In this document: positions 21,742-33,546 of the stretch, in pieces
Layout of the letters: each line of letters opens with the position of its first letter
Numbering within the stretch: the first letter of the stretch is position 1
Virus record (IMG/VR): IMGVR_UViG_3300004463_000226
Coordinates: 170,336-234,335 of that record
Length of the DNA stretch: 64,000 nucleotides
Reading direction: 5' to 3' (one strand)
Made by a program: the position numbers and the translations under genes
The notes under the pieces: model-generated
The model's database searches: none
What the model was told of the DNA's origin: nothing
Seen by the model: only the letters and a program-made list of their open reading frames with translations

Positions 21742-23859
21742 TTATTTTTGATATTCAAACATTCTGTAAGCATCGTTGATAGAAACTATTTCCTTCCCGT
21801 CTTTCCTTGCTTTGTCAACTTTACTGCTGGATTCATTGAGACTTGGTATAATAAGCATATCAACTTCTTTAGTGTACTTATCCATAACCATAACGTCACG
21901 GCTGTCGAGATATTTCTCAAACTCTTTATCCCTCACTTTACTGAAAGCAACTTTAATCGTGTACTTGCGAGTATCACGTTTTACTGTAAGCACGGAACGT
22001 AGAAACTTAATTAACTCGACATTTGCATTCACACCCTCGATAATCTTTACGGCAGTTTTCTCTTTTATTCCTCCTATCTTAGTAAGCCTCTTATAATCAT
22101 TCTTAGATGATATATCTAACAACTCATCTATATTATATATATCTAAAATCTTCTTAAACATTTTGCGCCCAATTGTAGGTATACCAATTGAACCTATAAG
22201 CTCATAATCATATACTTCTTTCCTAGAATCAATACCATCAAGTATCTTCTGGAATGACTTAGAACCGAATCCATTAAGAGCAACAATTTCTCTTTCGTGA
22301 TCTCTTAATTTATATAAACTCTCTATAGATCCTAAGATGTTTTCTTTAAATAAGGTTGTAATGATTCCAATAGAGATATTAGGTATAGACATTTTCTCTA
22401 CATAGTTTTCTATCTTACCAATTATTCTGGAATCACAGTAATCATTGTTGCATCGTAACACTGGCTGCTTTACTAACGGTTTATTACAATATGGGCAGTC
22501 TGTGGGAGATTTGAATCTCTCTCCAACATTTGTGTTTTCTGGATCTAATTCAAGATAAGGGATCACATCATACTTGATAATTACAGAATCCCCTTTAGAT
22601 AACTTTAAGCTTTCGAATCTATCCATAGAACCTAATGATATACTAGAGATTTTGTTACCTTTCAACTTAACAGGTTCTATTTTAGCAGTAGGAGCAACAT
22701 TACCGAGTGAACCTACTGAGAACTCAACATCATTGATAGATGTTTTCTTTTGCTGTGGTGGAAGTTTATATGCTACTTCAAATTTATTGATATTGCCTTC
22801 ACGACCTAAAGCATTTCTTATATCTGGATTAGTGATACGGATGACCATTCCATCAATATCAATTCCATGGGCTTCATCAACCATATTAGTCAGAATTTTT
22901 ATCCAGTTTTTAATTTCATCAAAATCATATAACTTTATACCTATCATAGATGGATAGTCAGCATATACCTGCATTGGCGTAGATATTTCTTTTGTTTTAT
23001 AATTTTGAACCTGAAGAGGAATTACTGTTAGAAATTCAAGGTATTTTCTATCTAACTCTTTAGAATTAATAATAGAACTGACTGCGCTTCTAGGACTTTT
23101 AAAGTCACCATATTTAGCACACAGTCTTTCATAATTTTCACGAGTCATTACAATTTCAGTTTTAACACCAAAAGGAAGACCTACATTAAAACGATCAACC
23201 TCACTCATATTAGTTCCTTTAAACATCGATGTCATTTCCTCAGCTTCATTTCTATCAGTATCTCCTCTCTTTAAAGCCTTCTCAACATCACCGCTACCAT
23301 TACATTCAAGTATACCTGATATACCATCCCACTTAGGAATAATCTCTATTACAATATCCTTTGGAAGATTTTTACCTAACTTATTAGAAGACGACTTAAT
23401 CCAATCTTCTAATGATTTACGTTTCTCTCCTGGTTTCTTCTCATCATTTGTGATGAAATGGATTTTATCGAGTGTACCTCTTAAGTCAGGGTATTTATGG
23501 GCAGAAATAACTTTATTCTTAGCATTACTTATACCAGCACCAACTATTTCATTTCCATTAACATCACGATGCAGTTCGTATAGCTTATCATAATTCTCAT
23601 CGCTTATTGGAGATACTATGTCGCTATTGTTATATACTTCCTGAAGTATACGAACCACTAATTCAATAATAGCATTATCTTCTTCATCAAGATCAGTAAC
23701 TACGTTGATATAATAGTTTACAAGATTATTGATTTTTAGAGGTCCCGTTAGTATCTCCAACCCCTTCTCAAAATCTCCGTCATAACGTAACTCATTGTAT
23801 AGATCTTGTAACTGTGCTAAAATACTTTTCTTGTCCATTTTATAATCATCCTTTCTCAC
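21742..23859 (-). CDS. ligA: NAD-dependent DNA ligase
   Basis: Seen: KWDG adenylation motif, DIDGMVI, AYKLP, Zn finger CPYC...CNNDYC, HhH repeats, BRCT-like C-terminus. Confidence 0.93.
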   Translation of the reverse strand: MRKDDYKMDKKSILAQLQDLYNELRYDGDFEKGLEILTGPLKINNLVNYYINVVTDLDEEDNAIIELVVRILQEVYNNSDIVSPISDENYDKLYELHRDVNGNEIVGAGISNAKNKVISAHKYPDLRGTLDKIHFITNDEKKPGEKRKSLEDWIKSSSNKLGKNLPKDIVIEIIPKWDGISGILECNGSGDVEKALKRGDTDRNEAEEMTSMFKGTNMSEVDRFNVGLPFGVKTEIVMTRENYERLCAKYGDFKSPRSAVSSIINSKELDRKYLEFLTVIPLQVQNYKTKEISTPMQVYADYPSMIGIKLYDFDEIKNWIKILTNMVDEAHGIDIDGMVIRITNPDIRNALGREGNINKFEVAYKLPPQQKKTSINDVEFSVGSLGNVAPTAKIEPVKLKGNKISSISLGSMDRFESLKLSKGDSVIIKYDVIPYLELDPENTNVGERFKSPTDCPYCNKPLVKQPVLRCNNDYCDSRIIGKIENYVEKMSIPNISIGIITTLFKENILGSIESLYKLRDHEREIVALNGFGSKSFQKILDGIDSRKEVYDYELIGSIGIPTIGRKMFKKILDIYNIDELLDISSKNDYKRLTKIGGIKEKTAVKIIEGVNANVELIKFLRSVLTVKRDTRKYTIKVAFSKVRDKEFEKYLDSRDVMVMDKYTKEVDMLIIPSLNESSSKVDKARKDGKEIVSINDAYRMFEYQK

Positions 23860-23880
23860 CTAATTGTTAATTACGTATTA

Positions 23881-23888
23881 ATAATATA
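23881..23888 (-). promoter_or_regulatory. TATATTAT promoter
   Basis: Seen: plus ATAATATA upstream of ligA. Confidence 0.65.
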
Positions 23889-23924
23889 TAATCAAAAAAA
23901 ATAAACCGTGTGTAGATACACGGT

Positions 23925-24944
23925 TTATAGCCAAGGCATTATTTTACGTAAATTAGTCATAGTTGATTCATCAAGTTTAAGTAGAGGTTGTGACGGACCT
24001 TCTAATGGTGATCTAGGTGTTTCAAAGTTAACAAGAACAGTTCGTGGTTTAGGTAACTCTTTCTTAGGTTTTTCTGCATTGACAGCAACGACTGTTTCTT
24101 TAGGTTTTTCTACTTTAGGTTTAGGCGACTCTACTGCTGGCTTTGGTTTCTCTGTTTCAGTTGGGGCTGAAGAACCTACAGTAAATCTTCTTTTATTAAA
24201 CGTGATCATACGAGGCTTGACCTTAGGTTTGTTATCTGCTTCAGTGATTAGGAAAGGTTCTTCCTCTTGGACAGACAATGGATTCTCATCGGGTGATTCA
24301 GGTTCATCAGGCGTGTCATCTTTAGGAGGATTTGCTTTAGCCTTTTCTTCATCCTCCTGTTTTTTCTTTTCCCTTTCTATTTGCTCATCAATAAATATAT
24401 ATAGAGATTCAATAAGACGCTCTATCTTTTCAGCAACACCAGGGAGTTTAAATAGATCTCCAAGGATTGCTTTAAATGCATTAGCACCTCCCATCATTTT
24501 AACTACCTTAGCAGTATCCTCATTTCTCTTTGCAACAACAACAATTTTATCCACAAGCTTTCTTGTGATATTTTTCTTTTGAGGAATAGTGCCTCCTTTT
24601 AAAACCTGTATAGTTATATCATTAACTACTTCTGGAAATGCAGGATCAATGAGTTCAAGACCAAATCCTTGTTCATCTGTTAACTTAACATCTGTTTCTT
24701 GAATGCTGTCAATATTTTTTAGCTGTAATTCATTAAGATCATTTATTACAAATTGATCAGCTCCATCATCTTTCTTAACAGGGAATAAATCAGCAATACC
24801 TTCCATTCTAATTTCAAATTCTTCTAATTCCCCGTTCATTTCAATCAATTGATGTGGTGTACCTTTAGCCATGTCTTCTGATTCTCCTTTTACCTTTGAT
24901 GTATCAGCTACGCTGTCAAAACTTAATGTGCCTTTTCTAGACAT
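23925..24944 (-). CDS. Hypothetical ParA-associated protein (start revised to MSRKG)
   Basis: Seen: GAGGAGG RBS inside the parA 3' end, 8-nt overlap; acidic N-half and P/E/K-rich linker; no ParB Box II motif. Confidence 0.75.
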   Translation of the reverse strand: MSRKGTLSFDSVADTSKVKGESEDMAKGTPHQLIEMNGELEEFEIRMEGIADLFPVKKDDGADQFVINDLNELQLKNIDSIQETDVKLTDEQGFGLELIDPAFPEVVNDITIQVLKGGTIPQKKNITRKLVDKIVVVAKRNEDTAKVVKMMGGANAFKAILGDLFKLPGVAEKIERLIESLYIFIDEQIEREKKKQEDEEKAKANPPKDDTPDEPESPDENPLSVQEEEPFLITEADNKPKVKPRMITFNKRRFTVGSSAPTETEKPKPAVESPKPKVEKPKETVVAVNAEKPKKELPKPRTVLVNFETPRSPLEGPSQPLLKLDESTMTNLRKIMPWL

Positions 24945-25731
24945 TTTGCAGAACCTCCTCAACTAGTTCGAAATAGCATTCAGAAACTTTGTGACTCGGT
25001 AACGCAAGTGTTGCAGGTGATTCATGATATGCAATACTGGATGCATAACGAATTGACTTAGGAATAATTGTATCCATCATAGGGATATTATTATCCTGAC
25101 AAAATCTTCTTGCTGTTGCCATAATCTCACTATGCAGACTTGTTCTCATGTCCACAAGAGTTGCTACAACTCCCATTAACTCAAGATCAGGATTAAATTT
25201 GTTCTTAAAGTCCTCAATTGTATCCAGTATCTTAATTAATGCACGCATTGAGTAGCTTTCTGGCTGGAATGGAACAATTACTTTGTCAGCAAATCTTAAA
25301 GCATTTCCTTGAATAAGTCCAAAGTTCGGTGGTGTATCAATAATGATATAATCATACCCATAAACAACGAAGTCTAACGCATCTTTAAGTAGATCGAATT
25401 GATCAGGATACTTATCTTTATTAGGAATAACCTCAAACTCAAAGTTACCCATTTCCTCATTGGCTGGAATAACGTCGATATAGTCATGAACTTTTACGAT
25501 AGTCTTATATGGATTTGGAAGCTCTCCAGTTAAAAGATCACGTACCGTACATTCAACCTGATCAGGATTCTTACCGAAGGATATCAATACATTCCCTTGA
25601 GAATCCATATCAACTAGTAACACCTTTTTATTCTGAGCAGCTAATACGCCAGCAATATTAACAGCTAAGGTTGTTTTTAAAACTCCACCTTTCCTTGTAG
25701 AAATTGTCCAGATCTCAGCTCTCCCTGACAT
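24937..25731 (-). CDS. parA: ParA/Soj-family ATPase
   Basis: Seen: deviant Walker A RKGGVLKTT, VLLVDMDSQGN, YIIIDTPP, IVPFQPE, IPKSIRY. Confidence 0.93.
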   Translation of the reverse strand: MSGRAEIWTISTRKGGVLKTTLAVNIAGVLAAQNKKVLLVDMDSQGNVLISFGKNPDQVECTVRDLLTGELPNPYKTIVKVHDYIDVIPANEEMGNFEFEVIPNKDKYPDQFDLLKDALDFVVYGYDYIIIDTPPNFGLIQGNALRFADKVIVPFQPESYSMRALIKILDTIEDFKNKFNPDLELMGVVATLVDMRTSLHSEIMATARRFCQDNNIPMMDTIIPKSIRYASSIAYHESPATLALPSHKVSECYFELVEEVLQNV

Positions 25732-25753
25732 AATATTTCCCCCTTTAATATAT

Positions 25754-25780
25754 TGATGTATTTATATATCTAATACATCA
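25754..25780. repeat. 9-bp perfect inverted repeat upstream of parA
   Basis: Seen: TGATGTATT-TATATATCT-AATACATCA. Confidence 0.85.
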
Positions 25781-25837
25781 TACCTTTATAATGTATAAAC
25801 AAAAAAAGAGGAGATACGGTTTCCCGTATCTCCCATA

Positions 25838-26134
25838 TTATTCCCCTTCAGGATATATGCTTTTTTGTTGCATAAATCTCTTTGCTTCATTTAAAGCCCA
25901 CAGTACAACATCAATACTTTCGATTTTATCAAAAGTCATTCTCACTGGGGTATCTTCCAACAGTGTCTCTATACCAATCTTATAATCCCCATGCTCACCA
26001 ATTGGATTGGGAGTAATTCGTTGGAAGAAACTTACTGAGCCTATCTCAGTATCTTTTAGTAAGCCAGGACATACTTCAATATCCCCACTTCCAAATTCTA
26101 ATTGCACTGATTCATCTACTTTGACTATAGGCAT
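25838..26134 (-). CDS. Hypothetical protein
   Basis: Seen: 98 aa, AGGAGG RBS, terminator at 25801-25833. Confidence 0.75.
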   Translation of the reverse strand: MPIVKVDESVQLEFGSGDIEVCPGLLKDTEIGSVSFFQRITPNPIGEHGDYKIGIETLLEDTPVRMTFDKIESIDVVLWALNEAKRFMQQKSIYPEGE

Positions 26135-28473: not shown

Positions 28474-29712
28474 TTACAATTCTTCGTCATGCTCCCCGAT
28501 AATACGTACTCCCAATCGCTCGATGATTTCCATTTCTGTTAGAGCTTTAACAGTTTCGTTTGGATCTACGCGGGAAAGTGTTCTTTCAAGGAATGGTACT
28601 GTAGTATCAAATAATGCAAAACGTATCTTTTCATCTTCCAAGAACTGTTTGCGGAATTTACGATTATCAAATCTTGCTTCCTCATGACCAGTAAAGTAAC
28701 GTTTAGGGTTTCGTCCTTCAACGAGACCGTTATCTTCAGCAAACTGATACTGTGTCAAGATAGGATCAAATCCAAGTTCTTGGTTATAGATTAGACGGCA
28801 GAATTGACCTGCTTTGTTAGTACGTGATTTTAAGAACTCACAACGAACTGCAAATCCATCAAATCCGTTTTCAGATTCTTCTAGCTTACCATTATAAACA
28901 AACTTAACTAATGTATGCGCATAGTAAATAGGAGCGTTACCACCAGGCATAGACTCATCTTGTTTCATGTAGTTAAGCTGAGCTTGAGTCTTAGCAAATG
29001 GGTTAATCTCCATTTTGTAGTTAATATGGTTAATAGCAATAACAATGATGTTATAAGCTTTGATGATTGGTGTTAAGCGTTTGTAGAACTGTGCTAATGC
29101 TTTAGCTACACGGTTAGCATAAGTTCCACCTTCCATTCCAGGGTTAGTGTCTTTAGAAGACATTGTTGGAATAGAGTCTAAAATAACTACAGTTGGTACG
29201 TATGATAATATCTTCTGATTAAACTCATTCAACAGACCAGTATCATACATGTAGTCTTCACGGTTTTCTTCTTTCTCTTTAGCTATAGCTTCAATGGAAT
29301 CATAAATATCCTCAATAGTGGATTTCTCCTGCTTTAAGTTATACTTTTCCATTAAATCATACTGACTAAAGCCGTTAACATTTTTAATACGTGTATAGGT
29401 TAATGCTTGTTCAAGGTCATAATGCTGAACCATTCCTGATTCGAACCTTTTAACAATATTAGAAGCCATCTGAATAGCAAATGTAGTCTTTGCTACACCT
29501 GACTTACCTACGATGGTAATAAATGATCCACCTACAGCTCCTGTTGATGGATACTCTGTAACGAGATTATCTTCCATATCTCGTACTTGAACCATATAAC
29601 CATTACGATAATCGAATGGTGCGAACCCTGTTGAATAACCTACTGCTGTCTGGGTTCTTGTAAATAATCCTTTTTTGTCTTTTGCACGTAATCGTGACAT
29701 TAAGGTAGCCAT
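28474..29712 (-). CDS. recA: RecA/UvsX recombinase
   Basis: Seen: Walker A GKSGVAKTT, YDLEQA, Walker B VVILDSIP, IIVIAINH, GGNA, KSRTN. Confidence 0.85.
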   Translation of the reverse strand: MATLMSRLRAKDKKGLFTRTQTAVGYSTGFAPFDYRNGYMVQVRDMEDNLVTEYPSTGAVGGSFITIVGKSGVAKTTFAIQMASNIVKRFESGMVQHYDLEQALTYTRIKNVNGFSQYDLMEKYNLKQEKSTIEDIYDSIEAIAKEKEENREDYMYDTGLLNEFNQKILSYVPTVVILDSIPTMSSKDTNPGMEGGTYANRVAKALAQFYKRLTPIIKAYNIIVIAINHINYKMEINPFAKTQAQLNYMKQDESMPGGNAPIYYAHTLVKFVYNGKLEESENGFDGFAVRCEFLKSRTNKAGQFCRLIYNQELGFDPILTQYQFAEDNGLVEGRNPKRYFTGHEEARFDNRKFRKQFLEDEKIRFALFDTTVPFLERTLSRVDPNETVKALTEMEIIERLGVRIIGEHDEEL

Positions 29713-32415: not shown

Positions 32416-33546
32416 TTACTTTTTTACGTAAAGGTTAAATACGTCATCTAAGTCAATCTCATTAACATCGACAGCTTTCTTAGAATCACTTGCACGTAAG
32501 TCATCAATAAGATCTGTTGCAGCAACATCCAAGATTGAAGATTCCTTAGTACGTGTTAACAACGCTGTAGCTTCATCAATACGCTGAACAATCTTTTCAA
32601 TTCTGTCATCAGGAACAGACAAACCTGACATAATTACAGCCACTCGATTTGTTTCATCTTCTGACTGATTAATATAAATATGCTCAAATCCTTCTACTGG
32701 CTCACCGACTAGATCCTTTACTTTAGGAATGTTAGTATCCAAGGATTTATAAACCTTTTCATTAAGGTTAACAATCAAACCTAAACGTTTGATAATTTGG
32801 TCACGATCTAACTCAGCATGAGCACTAGATTTAATGCTGTCGATTAAACGAGTTTCAAGATCTCTTTCGTCGATGTCTTTTTCTTTAACACCGAATGTAC
32901 GATTGATTACAAGACGACCAGTTGTTTCAATCAGCTTCAACATGTCTTTCTCGTCGATGCTATTGAATGGTGTTGTCTTTTGATAATCGCCGCGAACTAC
33001 CACCATGTCTTCAACGATTTCGCGATTAACTGTTTGCAGCATTTCATTAATAAGCTTGTTGGAATAGTTGTTATTATCATAAAGCTTATATACTGGATCA
33101 GATTGACGCATCTCCTTTAGATAGTCAATTGTATTTTGTTGGGCTGCAATTGATTCTTTCAATGGAGGTAAGATACCAATAAGAATGAATCGCTTGCTTG
33201 GGAATATACGCCCTAGAATATCATACATTACTGGAGCCATACCAGAACCAGTTCCACCACCAGTAGAACTTACAATGAAGACTACTTCATTATTTTTAAC
33301 AACATCAGCAAATATTGGTTCGCTGATTAGTTGTTTAATATGTGCTTGGATAAATGATTTAGCTATATTGCGATCTTTACCTGCTCCTTTTTCATCACCG
33401 ATAACAAGTGATGAAACAGCTGAAATTGTCTTAACATCTTTGTCAGAGCTATTTAGAGCAATACCATCAATGTCATAAACTTTCTTTGCTAACTCTGCAA
33501 CTTGATTCCCTGCGTTACCAATTCCGATTACTCCAATTTTCAACAT
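32416..33546 (-). CDS. FtsZ/tubulin-family GTPase (PhuZ/TubZ-like)
   Basis: Seen: GIGNAGNQVA, GAGKD, tubulin signature GGGTGSG, T7-like SIDEKD, acidic C-terminal tail. Confidence 0.92.
   Translation of the reverse strand: MLKIGVIGIGNAGNQVAELAKKVYDIDGIALNSSDKDVKTISAVSSLVIGDEKGAGKDRNIAKSFIQAHIKQLISEPIFADVVKNNEVVFIVSSTGGGTGSGMAPVMYDILGRIFPSKRFILIGILPPLKESIAAQQNTIDYLKEMRQSDPVYKLYDNNNYSNKLINEMLQTVNREIVEDMVVVRGDYQKTTPFNSIDEKDMLKLIETTGRLVINRTFGVKEKDIDERDLETRLIDSIKSSAHAELDRDQIIKRLGLIVNLNEKVYKSLDTNIPKVKDLVGEPVEGFEHIYINQSEDETNRVAVIMSGLSVPDDRIEKIVQRIDEATALLTRTKESSILDVAATDLIDDLRASDSKKAVDVNEIDLDDVFNLYVKK

What the first reader, a model, noticed from the sequence alone, without database searches (positions are those of the whole stretch)
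23925..25731. Jumbo-phage ParA paired with an unrecognised, non-ParB partner
A canonical Soj/ParA ATPase overlaps by 8 nt with a 339-aa gene that lacks the ParB Box II motif and any obvious RHH. It starts with a short basic peptide (MSRKGTLSF), reminiscent of ParA-stimulating N-terminal peptides, then has an acidic folded region, a long P/E/K linker and a short terminal helix (LRKIMPWL). The pair sits between ligA and RNAP beta-C. It could be a new ParA adaptor that positions phage DNA, replication factories or capsids, or it could interfere with host Soj/DnaA control.
Basis: partly seen in the sequence, partly recalled or inferred. Interest (0 to 1): 0.7.

Follow-up and report, generated by a model that had tools for sequence, protein, structure and literature searches.

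The report
Jumbo-phage ParA with orphan adaptor
A 234-kb soil jumbo phage carries a two-gene cassette, a ParA positioning ATPase plus a 339-residue partner that keeps only the ParA-activating N-terminal peptide of plasmid partition proteins and has swapped their DNA-binding domain for an orphan helical domain. It is a new kind of ParA adaptor, and its cargo is still unknown.

Summary
parA (24937-25731, minus strand, 264 aa) overlaps by 8 nt a 339-aa gene (23925-24944, minus strand). The pair sits between the NAD ligase and the non-virion RNAP beta-C gene of a 234,335-bp AR9/PBS1-like phage. The ParA is catalytically intact. The partner has no Pfam, NCBIfam, PHROG-function, PDB or fold match, and no ParB_N domain exists anywhere in the genome.

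New findings:
- The pair, in the same synteny and mostly with the same 8-nt overlap, recurs in at least seven other related metagenomic jumbo-phage contigs. Their ParAs form one clade (support 100).
- The partners (267-408 aa) evolve fast but are one family (hhalign E 3e-9).
- Sister ParAs of Bacillota plasmids and phage-plasmids have a 99-131-aa partner with a likely ribbon-helix-helix (RHH) C-terminus. Its N-terminus (MARKKRTIAGFDDVAN) matches the window's MSRKGTLSFDSVAD (hhalign E 7.7e-5), and the same ATG-KCT-AGA start junction is kept. The RHH is not retained (probability 0.1%).
- The cassette is insulated by terminators and has an AR9-type early promoter.

Best reading: a type-Ib-derived ParA/adaptor system in which the partner activates ParA and tethers a phage cargo, most likely the phage genome or replication body. 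Binding and cargo are untested. This is a new variant of a known kind.

The parts
25809..25834 (-). Palindromic hairpin GGGAGATACGG-GAAA-CCGTATCTCC followed by a T-run. It is terminator-like, and its sequence is conserved upstream of parA in 6 of 8 related phages. It is a candidate cis site.
   Evidence: Terminator scan. RNA fold -19.5 kcal/mol, z -5.0. Alignment of upstream regions. Occurs once per locus, always before parA. It is the only full copy in the genome.
25788..25800 (-). AR9-type early (virion RNAP) promoter-like motif GTTTATACATTAT, upstream of parA.
   Evidence: TATAYATTAT occurs 50 times in the genome against about 11 expected. It is conserved before parA in all 8 phages. The AR9 early consensus is AAATATATATTAT-N6-G (PMC5312081).
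24937..25731 (-). parA: a small Soj-like (type Ib) ParA ATPase of 264 aa. Walker A is KGGVLKT (K14, K19), with D41/D43 and D132.
   Evidence: Invariant catalytic columns in 57 homologues. Clade in the tree.
24954..24960 (-). Ribosome-binding site GAGGAGG for the partner, lying inside the 3' end of parA.
   Evidence: Sequence. The same arrangement is seen in the homologous cassettes.
23925..24944 (-). Partner gene, 339 aa, in the ParB slot: an orphan adaptor family.
24897..24944 (-). Partner aa 1-16: basic N-terminal peptide with the hydrophobic-S/G-F-D/E-D/S-V-A motif. This is the presumed ParA-binding and ParA-activating peptide.
   Evidence: Shared with the 99-131-aa partners of sister ParAs. 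hhalign E 7.7e-5 over residues 1-25 only. An HMM of the small partners' N-termini ranks this ORF first of 1015 genome ORFs. The start junction is conserved at DNA level.
24684..24896 (-). Partner aa 17-87: acidic, low-confidence region. It holds the conserved motifs LIEMNG and I-x-M-E...L-x-N-H-x-F...D-x-F-I-x-D-x-L.
   Evidence: Alignments, pLDDT below 55, charge profile.
24330..24683 (-). Partner aa 88-205: helical bundle core (about 6 helices, pLDDT about 90) with no recognisable fold relatives.
   Evidence: AF2 with a 9-sequence alignment. Fold searches without a convincing match.
23976..24329 (-). Partner aa 206-323: disordered P/E/K-rich linker. It contains the conserved E-x-F/Y-L-I/V-T motif (EPFLIT).
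23928..23975 (-). Partner aa 324-339: basic C-terminal tail with a weakly predicted helix (LRKIMPWL). It corresponds to the K/R-hydrophobic-P-C-COOH tail of relatives.
23901..23928 (-). Intrinsic terminator after the partner gene. Its sequence is not conserved among relatives.

Best explanation
The locus is a self-contained two-gene positioning cassette laid out as terminator, early promoter, parA, partner, terminator. It was derived from a type-Ib plasmid or phage-plasmid partition operon of Bacillota and inserted into the variable slot between the non-virion RNAP beta-C gene and the NAD ligase of an AR9-like jumbo phage lineage.

Proposed mechanism:
- ParA is an intact ATPase that, as an ATP dimer, should bind DNA (the nucleoid) non-specifically.
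- The 339-aa protein occupies the ParB/ParG slot. It keeps the ancestral N-terminal basic peptide that contacts the ParA dimer and triggers ATP hydrolysis.
- Its ribbon-helix-helix DNA-binding domain has been replaced by acidic disordered segments, an orphan helical bundle (a likely oligomerisation or cargo-binding module) and a basic C-terminal tail.
- It therefore acts as the ATPase-activating adaptor that tethers a phage cargo to ParA, so the cargo is positioned or partitioned by the usual diffusion-ratchet.
- The cargo is most likely the incoming or replicating phage genome or its replication body, either during lytic growth or in a PBS1-like carrier state.

Shown here: gene structure, conservation, descent, loss of the RHH, intact ATPase motifs, and promoter and terminator motifs.

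Inferred: ParA-partner binding, ATPase stimulation, nucleoid binding, early expression, and the identity of the cargo.
For: ParA identity and intact motifs:
- Family and structure hits.
- K14, G15, G16, K19, T20, D41, D43 and D132 are invariant in 57 homologues.

Conserved pairing:
- The order RNAP beta, parA, partner (267-408 aa), ligase holds in L005-L008, L009, L014, L015, L016 and L017. L019 shows parA and partner on a short contig.
- An 8-nt overlap occurs in 5 of the 8 phages.

One partner family:
- The exhaustive HMMER search finds P0004, P0005 and P0006 (E 8e-19 to 8e-6).
- hhalign between the two subgroups gives 96% probability, E 3e-9.
- Shared motifs are seen in the alignments.

Descent from type Ib:
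- The jumbo-phage ParAs form one clade (SH-aLRT 100, stem 0.52) among Bacillota plasmid and phage-plasmid ParAs.
- Those relatives carry small downstream partners with the same N-terminal motif and an RHH-like C-terminus.
- Only residues 1-25 are shared (E 7.7e-5).
- The start junction ATG-KCT-AGA overlapping the parA stop is conserved.

Peptide principle: short N-terminal ParB/ParG peptides with a key Arg bind at the ParA dimer interface (PMC11229316).

Insulated cassette with an AR9-type early promoter.

AR9 has the same RNAP beta and ligase backbone but no parA.
Against: - No experimental or computational proof of binding. The complex prediction gave no verdict, which is neither support nor refutation.
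- No DNA-binding fold was recognised in the partner.
- The protein is net acidic.
- No centromere-like repeat array was found near the cassette or in the genome.
- The N-terminal homology rests on about 25 residues (62% hhalign probability; the stand-alone HMM E-value is 0.45 even though the ORF ranks first).
- The phage also has a tubulin homologue that could do the positioning.
- Early expression is inferred only from a motif.
Confidence: 0.6

Rival explanations
1. The system has the same ParA/adaptor mechanics, but the cargo is a protein assembly rather than DNA, in the manner of McdA-McdB. The disorder-rich partner with its helical core would form or decorate a body such as a replication/transcription factory, procapsid cluster or condensate, and ParA would space or centre it.
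For: - The RHH DNA-binding domain is lost.
- No DNA-binding fold or centromere repeats were found.
- The protein is net acidic, with long disordered low-complexity linkers and several short conserved motifs separated by variable spacers, as in protein adaptors of ParA/MinD ATPases (own knowledge of McdB, PomXY and ParP).
- The C-terminal K/R-hydrophobic-P-C tail looks like a docking peptide.
Against: - There is no homology to any known protein-cargo adaptor.
- No candidate cargo gene co-varies in the loci examined. The small ORFs next to the partner differ between phages.
- The ancestry is from a DNA partition system.
- The basic N- and C-termini could still bind DNA.
Confidence: 0.22
2. The cassette is a host-interference device. 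The partner's N-terminal peptide or the phage ParA would act on host Soj/Spo0J/DnaA to perturb chromosome segregation, replication initiation or sporulation for the phage's benefit.
For: - The motif suggests early expression.
- ParA is Soj-like.
- N-terminal ParB peptides act on Soj-type ATPases in general.
Against: - The partner is always encoded with, and translationally coupled to, its own ParA.
- Its peptide matches the partners of the sister ParA subfamily rather than chromosomal ParB.
- ParA keeps all catalytic residues, so it is not a dominant-negative decoy.
- Nothing links the locus to DnaA.
Confidence: 0.08
3. The partner is a fast-decaying remnant of the old parB/parG gene with no function of its own, and only ParA is used.
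For: - Sequence divergence is extreme (12-34% identity among partners against 57-70% among ParAs).
- The protein is mostly disordered.
- It is an orphan in all databases.
Against: - Intact ORFs of 267-408 aa are kept in 9 lineages, with a conserved RBS and coupling, conserved N-terminal peptide, internal motifs and a confidently predicted helical core.
- A ParA without an activator would be an unusual system.
Confidence: 0.05

Closest known systems
Type Ib partition systems with RHH centromere-binding proteins (TP228 ParF-ParG; pSM19035 delta-omega)
   Same: A small Soj-like ParA without an N-terminal HTH. The partner gene lies immediately downstream and is translationally coupled. The partner has a flexible N-terminal tail carrying basic residues that activate the ATPase (PMC11229316; PMC7308502 and PMC9499535 listed).
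   Different: There is no ribbon-helix-helix domain. The partner is 3-4 times longer, net acidic, and has an orphan helical core and long disordered linkers. No iteron centromere was found upstream of parA. The host replicon is a 234-kb AR9-like phage, not a plasmid.
ParA plus small 'RepA-linked protein' pairs of Bacillota phage-plasmids and phages (Bacillus phage 0105phi7-2 gp035/034, Parageobacillus phage JGon-2020a, Bacillus phage FADO gp194/193, IMG/VR contigs L002-L004, L018)
   Same: These are the nearest sequence relatives. ParA is 41-57% identical and has the same KGGVLKT Walker A. The parA-stop/partner-start junction is the same. The partner's N-terminal motif, basic residues followed by I/L-A/S-G/S-F-D-D/S-V-A, is the same.
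   Different: Their partners are 99-131 aa and end in an RHH-like domain (weak PDB hit to the 56-residue protein 56B, 2kel, which I recall as the RHH regulator SvtR). The jumbo-phage partners share none of that domain.
Protein-cargo adaptors of ParA/MinD ATPases (McdB for carboxysomes, PomX/PomY, ParP, TlpT)
   Same: It works like them in outline: an N-terminal basic ATPase-activating peptide, extensive disorder, and a helical central module (own knowledge; PomXY paper PMC13170346 listed).
   Different: No sequence or fold similarity was detected. The cargo here is unknown. The ancestry is from a DNA partition operon.
Chromosomal Soj-Spo0J (ParABS)
   Same: The ParA fold and motifs match (PDB hits at 1e-29 to 1e-36). 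The principle that the extreme N-terminus of the partner engages the ParA dimer also applies.
   Different: There is no ParB_N CTPase domain, HTH or Box II anywhere in the genome. No parS-like palindrome array was found.
Tubulin-based phage systems (PhuZ of Chimalliviridae; TubZ of Clostridium phage c-st)
   Same: These are phage-encoded NTPases that position or partition phage DNA. This phage also has a tubulin homologue 7 kb away.
   Different: They use a different protein superfamily and mechanism. A review states that AR9-like phages lack chimallin (PMC13282480).

Membership tests
ParA/Soj superfamily (deviant Walker A ATPases), small type Ib class | Deviant Walker A xKGGxxK[ST] with the signature N-terminal lysine | tested here: met
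   The motif is RKGGVLKTT. K14, G15, G16, K19 and T20 are invariant in 57 homologues. Leu18 replaces the usual Gly throughout this subfamily.
ParA/Soj superfamily (deviant Walker A ATPases), small type Ib class | Walker A' and Walker B aspartates, plus profile matches above the curated cut-offs | tested here: met
   D41, D43 and D132 are invariant. AAA_31 scores 148 bits (cut-off 27) and CbiA 79.7 bits (cut-off 25.4).
ParA/Soj superfamily (deviant Walker A ATPases), small type Ib class | About 200-270 aa with no N-terminal HTH extension (which would mark type Ia) | tested here: met
   The protein is 264 aa and aligns end to end with Soj/ParA structures of 255-276 aa.
ParA/Soj superfamily (deviant Walker A ATPases), small type Ib class | ATP-dependent dimerisation and non-specific DNA binding | not testable with these tools
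   This needs biochemistry. Only motif conservation is available.
NCBIfam equivalogs ParA_partition, PrgP, RepA, SopA | Score above the curated equivalog cut-off | tested here: not met
   Scores were 91 against 180, 73 against 400, 60 against 348 and 54 against 725 bits. It is a ParA but belongs to none of these named orthologue groups.
ParB/Spo0J (ParB_N CTPase + HTH) | ParB_N domain with Box II (GERRxRA) and an HTH DNA-binding domain | tested here: not met
   The partner has no Pfam or NCBIfam hit, none of its relatives has one, and PF02195 is absent from the whole 234-kb genome.
Type Ib RHH centromere-binding proteins (ParG/omega class) | Encoded directly downstream of, and coupled to, a small ParA | tested here: met
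   The 8-nt overlap and start junction are shared with the small-partner operons.
Type Ib RHH centromere-binding proteins (ParG/omega class) | Flexible N-terminal tail with basic residue(s) that activate ParA | tested here: inconclusive
   The sequence motif is shared with the small partners (hhalign E 7.7e-5, probability 62%; HMM rank 1 of 1015 but E 0.45). Activation itself is untested, and the complex prediction gave no verdict.
Type Ib RHH centromere-binding proteins (ParG/omega class) | C-terminal ribbon-helix-helix dimer domain | tested here: not met
   hhalign of the tails against the RHH domains gives probability 0.1%. There is no RHH Pfam hit and no strand in the AF2 model.
Type Ib RHH centromere-binding proteins (ParG/omega class) | Array of direct or inverted repeats (centromere/operator) next to the operon | tested here: not met
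   No repeat family lies near the cassette, there are no tandem arrays and no clustered k-mers genome-wide. Only one conserved palindromic hairpin lies upstream.
McdB-like and other protein-cargo adaptors | Homology to a described adaptor family, or a demonstrated protein cargo | tested here: not met
   No sequence or fold match was found. The resemblance is architectural only.

The most novel reading that the evidence does not exclude
In a lineage of chimallin-less, AR9-like jumbo phages of soil Bacillota, a plasmid partition module has been re-tooled into a ParA-based organiser. Its disorder-rich orphan adaptor would tether a phage body (replication/transcription factory or genome) to the nucleoid. 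This could be a ParA analogue of the PhuZ spindle, or a device that carries the phage genome through cell division and into the forespore during a PBS1-like carrier state. The conserved palindromic hairpin upstream of parA might serve as its single cis site.
Probability: 0.2. Interest if true: 0.8.

Novelty: new variant of a known kind. Interest (0 to 1): 0.58.

Why it matters
ParA ATPases are generic positioning engines, and what they move is set by the adaptor. Here a phage lineage kept the engine and the activating peptide but replaced the DNA-binding module. This gives a natural case of adaptor re-wiring with a traceable ancestor.

Intracellular organisation of jumbo phages is understood mainly for the tubulin and nuclear-shell system of Chimalliviridae. 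AR9-like phages lack that shell, and how they place their DNA is unknown.

A conserved cassette with an early-promoter motif and a ParA/adaptor pair, sitting next to a tubulin homologue, gives a concrete and testable handle on that question. It also bears on the old observation that PBS1-type phages persist in carrier states and spores.

The partner family has about 10 known members and no domain annotation. It is also a new protein family to define.

Tried and rejected
- Complex prediction of the ParA dimer with partner residues 1-45, using my own alignments, gave no verdict (score 0.00; controls not run). This is neither support nor evidence against binding.
- A single-sequence AF2 model was too poor to use (pLDDT 44). 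The 9-sequence model was used instead.
- Fold searches found nothing convincing: Foldseek against PDB (best E 0.44), BFVD (best E 0.03, TM below 0.2) and AFDB clusters (best E 1.6e-3 but TM 0.16), VIA-align wide (best Z 5.4, below what is meaningful for helical bundles) and the ESM Atlas (TM below 0.45).
- Profile searches of PDB sequences found nothing.
- The word-based homologue search found only the protein itself.
- tblastn of INPHARED phages and IMG/VR scans with the partner or its profile found nothing.
- The centromere search found no arrays (local repeats, TRF, genome-wide k-mers).
- The dispersed TAATCAATAATAAT motif is a general element downstream of early promoters and is not par-specific.
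- An exact-match scan of IMG/VR for the hairpin returned two unrelated high-GC contexts.
- Rfam gave only chance-level hits.
- PADLOC gave no defence-system match.
- No RNA runs were listed.
- Contigs from four rhizosphere runs are 100% identical to the window, so no polymorphism was available to measure selection.
- I considered that the C-terminal VLVNFETP stretch might be a remnant RHH ribbon. I rejected this on the hhalign result.
- I considered the small ORFs between partner and ligase in L014 and L015 as a third component. They are unrelated to each other and absent from the window.
Full report
**What is there**

The window is bases 170336-234335 of a 234,335-bp virus record. On the minus strand, parA runs 25731 to 24937 (264 aa). 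A second gene starts at the ATG at 24944, 8 nt before the end of parA, and runs to 23925 (339 aa).

The partner's ATG is preceded by GAGGAGG at a 9-nt spacing. The longer TTG-initiated frame (345 aa) is not supported by the homologues.

The pair is bracketed by two strong terminator-like hairpins, at 25809-25834 and 23901-23928.

Between the upstream hairpin and parA lies GTTTATACATTAT. The core TATAYATTAT occurs 50 times in the genome against about 11 expected, mostly in the direction of the genes. It matches the early, virion-RNAP promoter consensus of phage AR9, AAATATATATTAT-N6-G (PMC5312081).

The neighbours are an NAD-dependent DNA ligase downstream and, upstream, a 98-aa ORF followed by the C-terminal half of the non-virion RNAP beta subunit. 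That subunit is 38% identical to AR9/PBS1. A UvsX-like recombinase follows.

AR9 has the same backbone of UvsX, RNAP beta and ligase. There, the slot between RNAP beta and the ligase holds five small ORFs and no parA, and AR9/PBS1 did not appear among the phage ParA hits.

The phage turns up in at least ten rhizosphere or soil metagenome runs. Contigs from four of them are identical to the window over 23800-25900.

**ParA**

- It matches AAA_31, CbiA and phrog_164 strongly.
- It aligns over its full length with solved ParA/Soj proteins.
- The signature and catalytic residues (K14, K19, D41, D43, D132) are invariant in an alignment of 57 homologues.
- The Walker A reads KGGVLKT. The Leu in place of the usual Gly is invariant in the whole subfamily, so it is a family trait and not a defect.
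- It does not reach the cut-offs of any named NCBIfam equivalog.

**The partner**

- It has no Pfam or NCBIfam family, and only a chance-level PHROG hit.
- No PDB sequence relative was found.
- A ParB_N domain is absent from the entire genome.
- An exhaustive HMMER search of 1.8 billion representatives found just three relatives.

Searching through ParA worked better. ParAs 57-70% identical to the window's sit in the same place (RNAP beta, parA, partner, ligase) on 36-238-kb contigs, and each is followed by a 267-358-aa ORF. One more case with a 408-aa partner lies on a short contig.

The two partner subgroups are homologous. hhalign gives probability 96% and E 3e-9, from the N-terminus through a conserved E-x-F/Y-L-I/V-T motif. 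Pairwise identity to the window's protein is only 12-34%, while the ParAs stay at 57-70%.

The shared architecture is:
- a basic N-terminus followed by hydrophobic-S/G-F-D/E-D/S-V-A;
- an acidic region with the motifs LIEMNG and I-x-M-E...N-H-x-F;
- a helical core;
- the F-L-I/V-T motif;
- a charged low-complexity linker;
- a basic tail of about 45 residues.

In five of nine members the tail ends in K/R-hydrophobic-P-C. In the window it ends KIMPWL.

With the 9-sequence alignment, AF2 models residues 88-205 as a helical bundle at pLDDT about 90. Everything else is low-confidence, apart from a weak terminal helix. No fold library gave a convincing match.

**Origin**

In a ParA tree the jumbo-phage proteins form one clade of 11 rows, with SH-aLRT 100 and a stem length of 0.52. 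Seven of the 11 have a confirmed long partner in the tree labels; L019's row was still labelled unknown when the tree was built and was confirmed afterwards. This clade sits among ParAs of Bacillota plasmids, phage-plasmids and phages.

Every relative outside the clade that I inspected has a 99-131-aa downstream partner. These are L002-L004, L018, Parageobacillus phage JGon-2020a, Bacillus phages FADO and 0105phi7-2. In 0105phi7-2 the partner is annotated 'RepA-linked protein'.

Most of these small partners begin MARKKRTIAGFDDVAN or a close variant, and FADO and 0105phi7-2 have looser versions. They end in a domain with the beta-strand and two-helix pattern of a ribbon-helix-helix. The evidence for that fold is a weak profile hit to the 56-residue protein 56B (2kel), which I recall as the RHH regulator SvtR.

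The window's MSRKGTLSFDSVAD is the same motif:
- Profile-profile comparison aligns residues 1-25 and nothing else (E 7.7e-5).
- An HMM of the small partners' N-termini ranks the partner ORF first among 1015 ORFs of the genome, though with a non-significant E-value taken alone.
- At DNA level the junction is the same. An RBS is followed by ATG-KCT-AGA/AAG, with the parA stop embedded in codons 2-3, in both long and small partner genes.

The tails of the long partners show no similarity to the RHH domain (probability 0.1%).

The simplest history is therefore this. A type-Ib par operon was captured once by the ancestor of this phage clade. The parB-slot gene kept its 5' end and lost or replaced the rest.

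**How it most likely works**

The ParB/ParG literature shows that a short N-terminal peptide with a key Arg binds at the ParA dimer interface (PMC11229316). By analogy, the conserved peptide here is the ParA-binding and ATPase-activating element. The remainder of the protein links ParA to a cargo.

Arguments for the phage genome or replication body as cargo:
- the system descends from a DNA partition system;
- it lies inside the replication/transcription gene block;
- it carries an early-promoter motif, with no AACA-N6-TA/G late motif visible upstream of parA in the sequence read.

Arguments that leave a protein cargo (McdB-like logic) a serious rival:
- the RHH is lost;
- the protein is acidic and disordered;
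- no centromere repeats were found.

The one par-specific cis candidate is the upstream hairpin. Its 22-nt palindrome GAGATACGG-GAAA-CCGTATCTC keeps its sequence in six phages, whatever gene lies upstream. It occurs exactly once per locus. The terminator after the partner, by contrast, is not conserved. The hairpin may be only a terminator, and I could not test that.

**Limits**

- Binding, ATPase stimulation, DNA binding and timing of expression are all inferred.
- The complex prediction returned no verdict.
- No RNA data were listed.
- The papers I read mention no ParA system of AR9-like jumbo phages, but the library is incomplete.

**Verdict**

The partner is not a stranger to partition proteins. 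It is a type-Ib partner that kept its activating peptide and exchanged its DNA-binding domain for an orphan module. That makes it a new variant of a known kind, with an open and testable question about its cargo.

Noticed in passing
window 32416-33546 (-): A 376-aa tubulin/FtsZ-family gene lies about 7 kb from the par cassette. It hits Pfam Tubulin at 3.6e-16 and phrog_4733 'tubulin PhuZ' at 3e-10. The nearest phage hits are Bacillus phage G and the Clostridium phage c-st TubZ gene, at about 25-27% identity. The phage therefore carries both a ParA and a tubulin-type positioning NTPase.
   Followed up: partly
window 25809-25834 (-); L005 5127-5143; L009 2048-2063; L014 3914-3929; L015 3909-3925; L017 3919-3934: The hairpin/terminator upstream of the parA promoter keeps its sequence (core ATACGG-GAAA-CCGTAT) in six phages whose ParAs are 57-70% identical, whatever gene precedes it. 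L015 shows one symmetric (compensatory) change. It may be a protein-binding palindrome as well as a terminator.
   Followed up: partly
whole genome; e.g. window 25788-25797 and 23881-23890 (-): The AR9-type early promoter core TATAYATTAT occurs 50 times against about 11 expected. A second dispersed motif, TAATCAATAATAAT(TG), occurs 14 times and, where I compared coordinates, lies about 20-40 nt downstream of such promoters. It is probably a shared early 5'-leader element.
   Followed up: partly
window 23860-23900 (-): The ligase gene is preceded by both an early-type motif (TATATATTAT) and an AACA-N6-TG late-type motif. This resembles the 'continuously expressed' class described for AR9 (sequence; consensus).
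   Followed up: no
ParA residues 14-20 (window about 25672-25692): Walker A is KGGVLKT. The Leu in place of the canonical Gly is invariant in all 57 aligned homologues, including the plasmid and phage-plasmid relatives. This defines a distinct ParA subfamily.
   Followed up: yes
C-termini of P0128-P0131 and P0133 (loci L014-L017, L019): Five of nine partner homologues end in K/R-hydrophobic-P/S-C-COOH. One of them ends -CPC. A conserved C-terminal cysteine is unusual and unexplained.
   Followed up: no
L014 3222-3905: In the 238-kb relative, a Bax1-I (BI-1-like membrane protein) gene sits between RNAP beta and the hairpin/parA. The slot upstream of the cassette is variable: a 98-aa ORF in the window and nothing in L005.
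   Followed up: no
window 28474-29712 (-): A UvsX-like recombinase (phrog_97, 1.3e-37) lies upstream of RNAP beta, in the same order as AR9 g086-g089. This shows a conserved replication/transcription backbone.
   Followed up: yes
genome ends (G000): The record is classed as having direct terminal repeats, but the first 50-10,000 bases are not repeated exactly at the far end in my check. Any repeat must therefore be shorter or offset.
   Followed up: no
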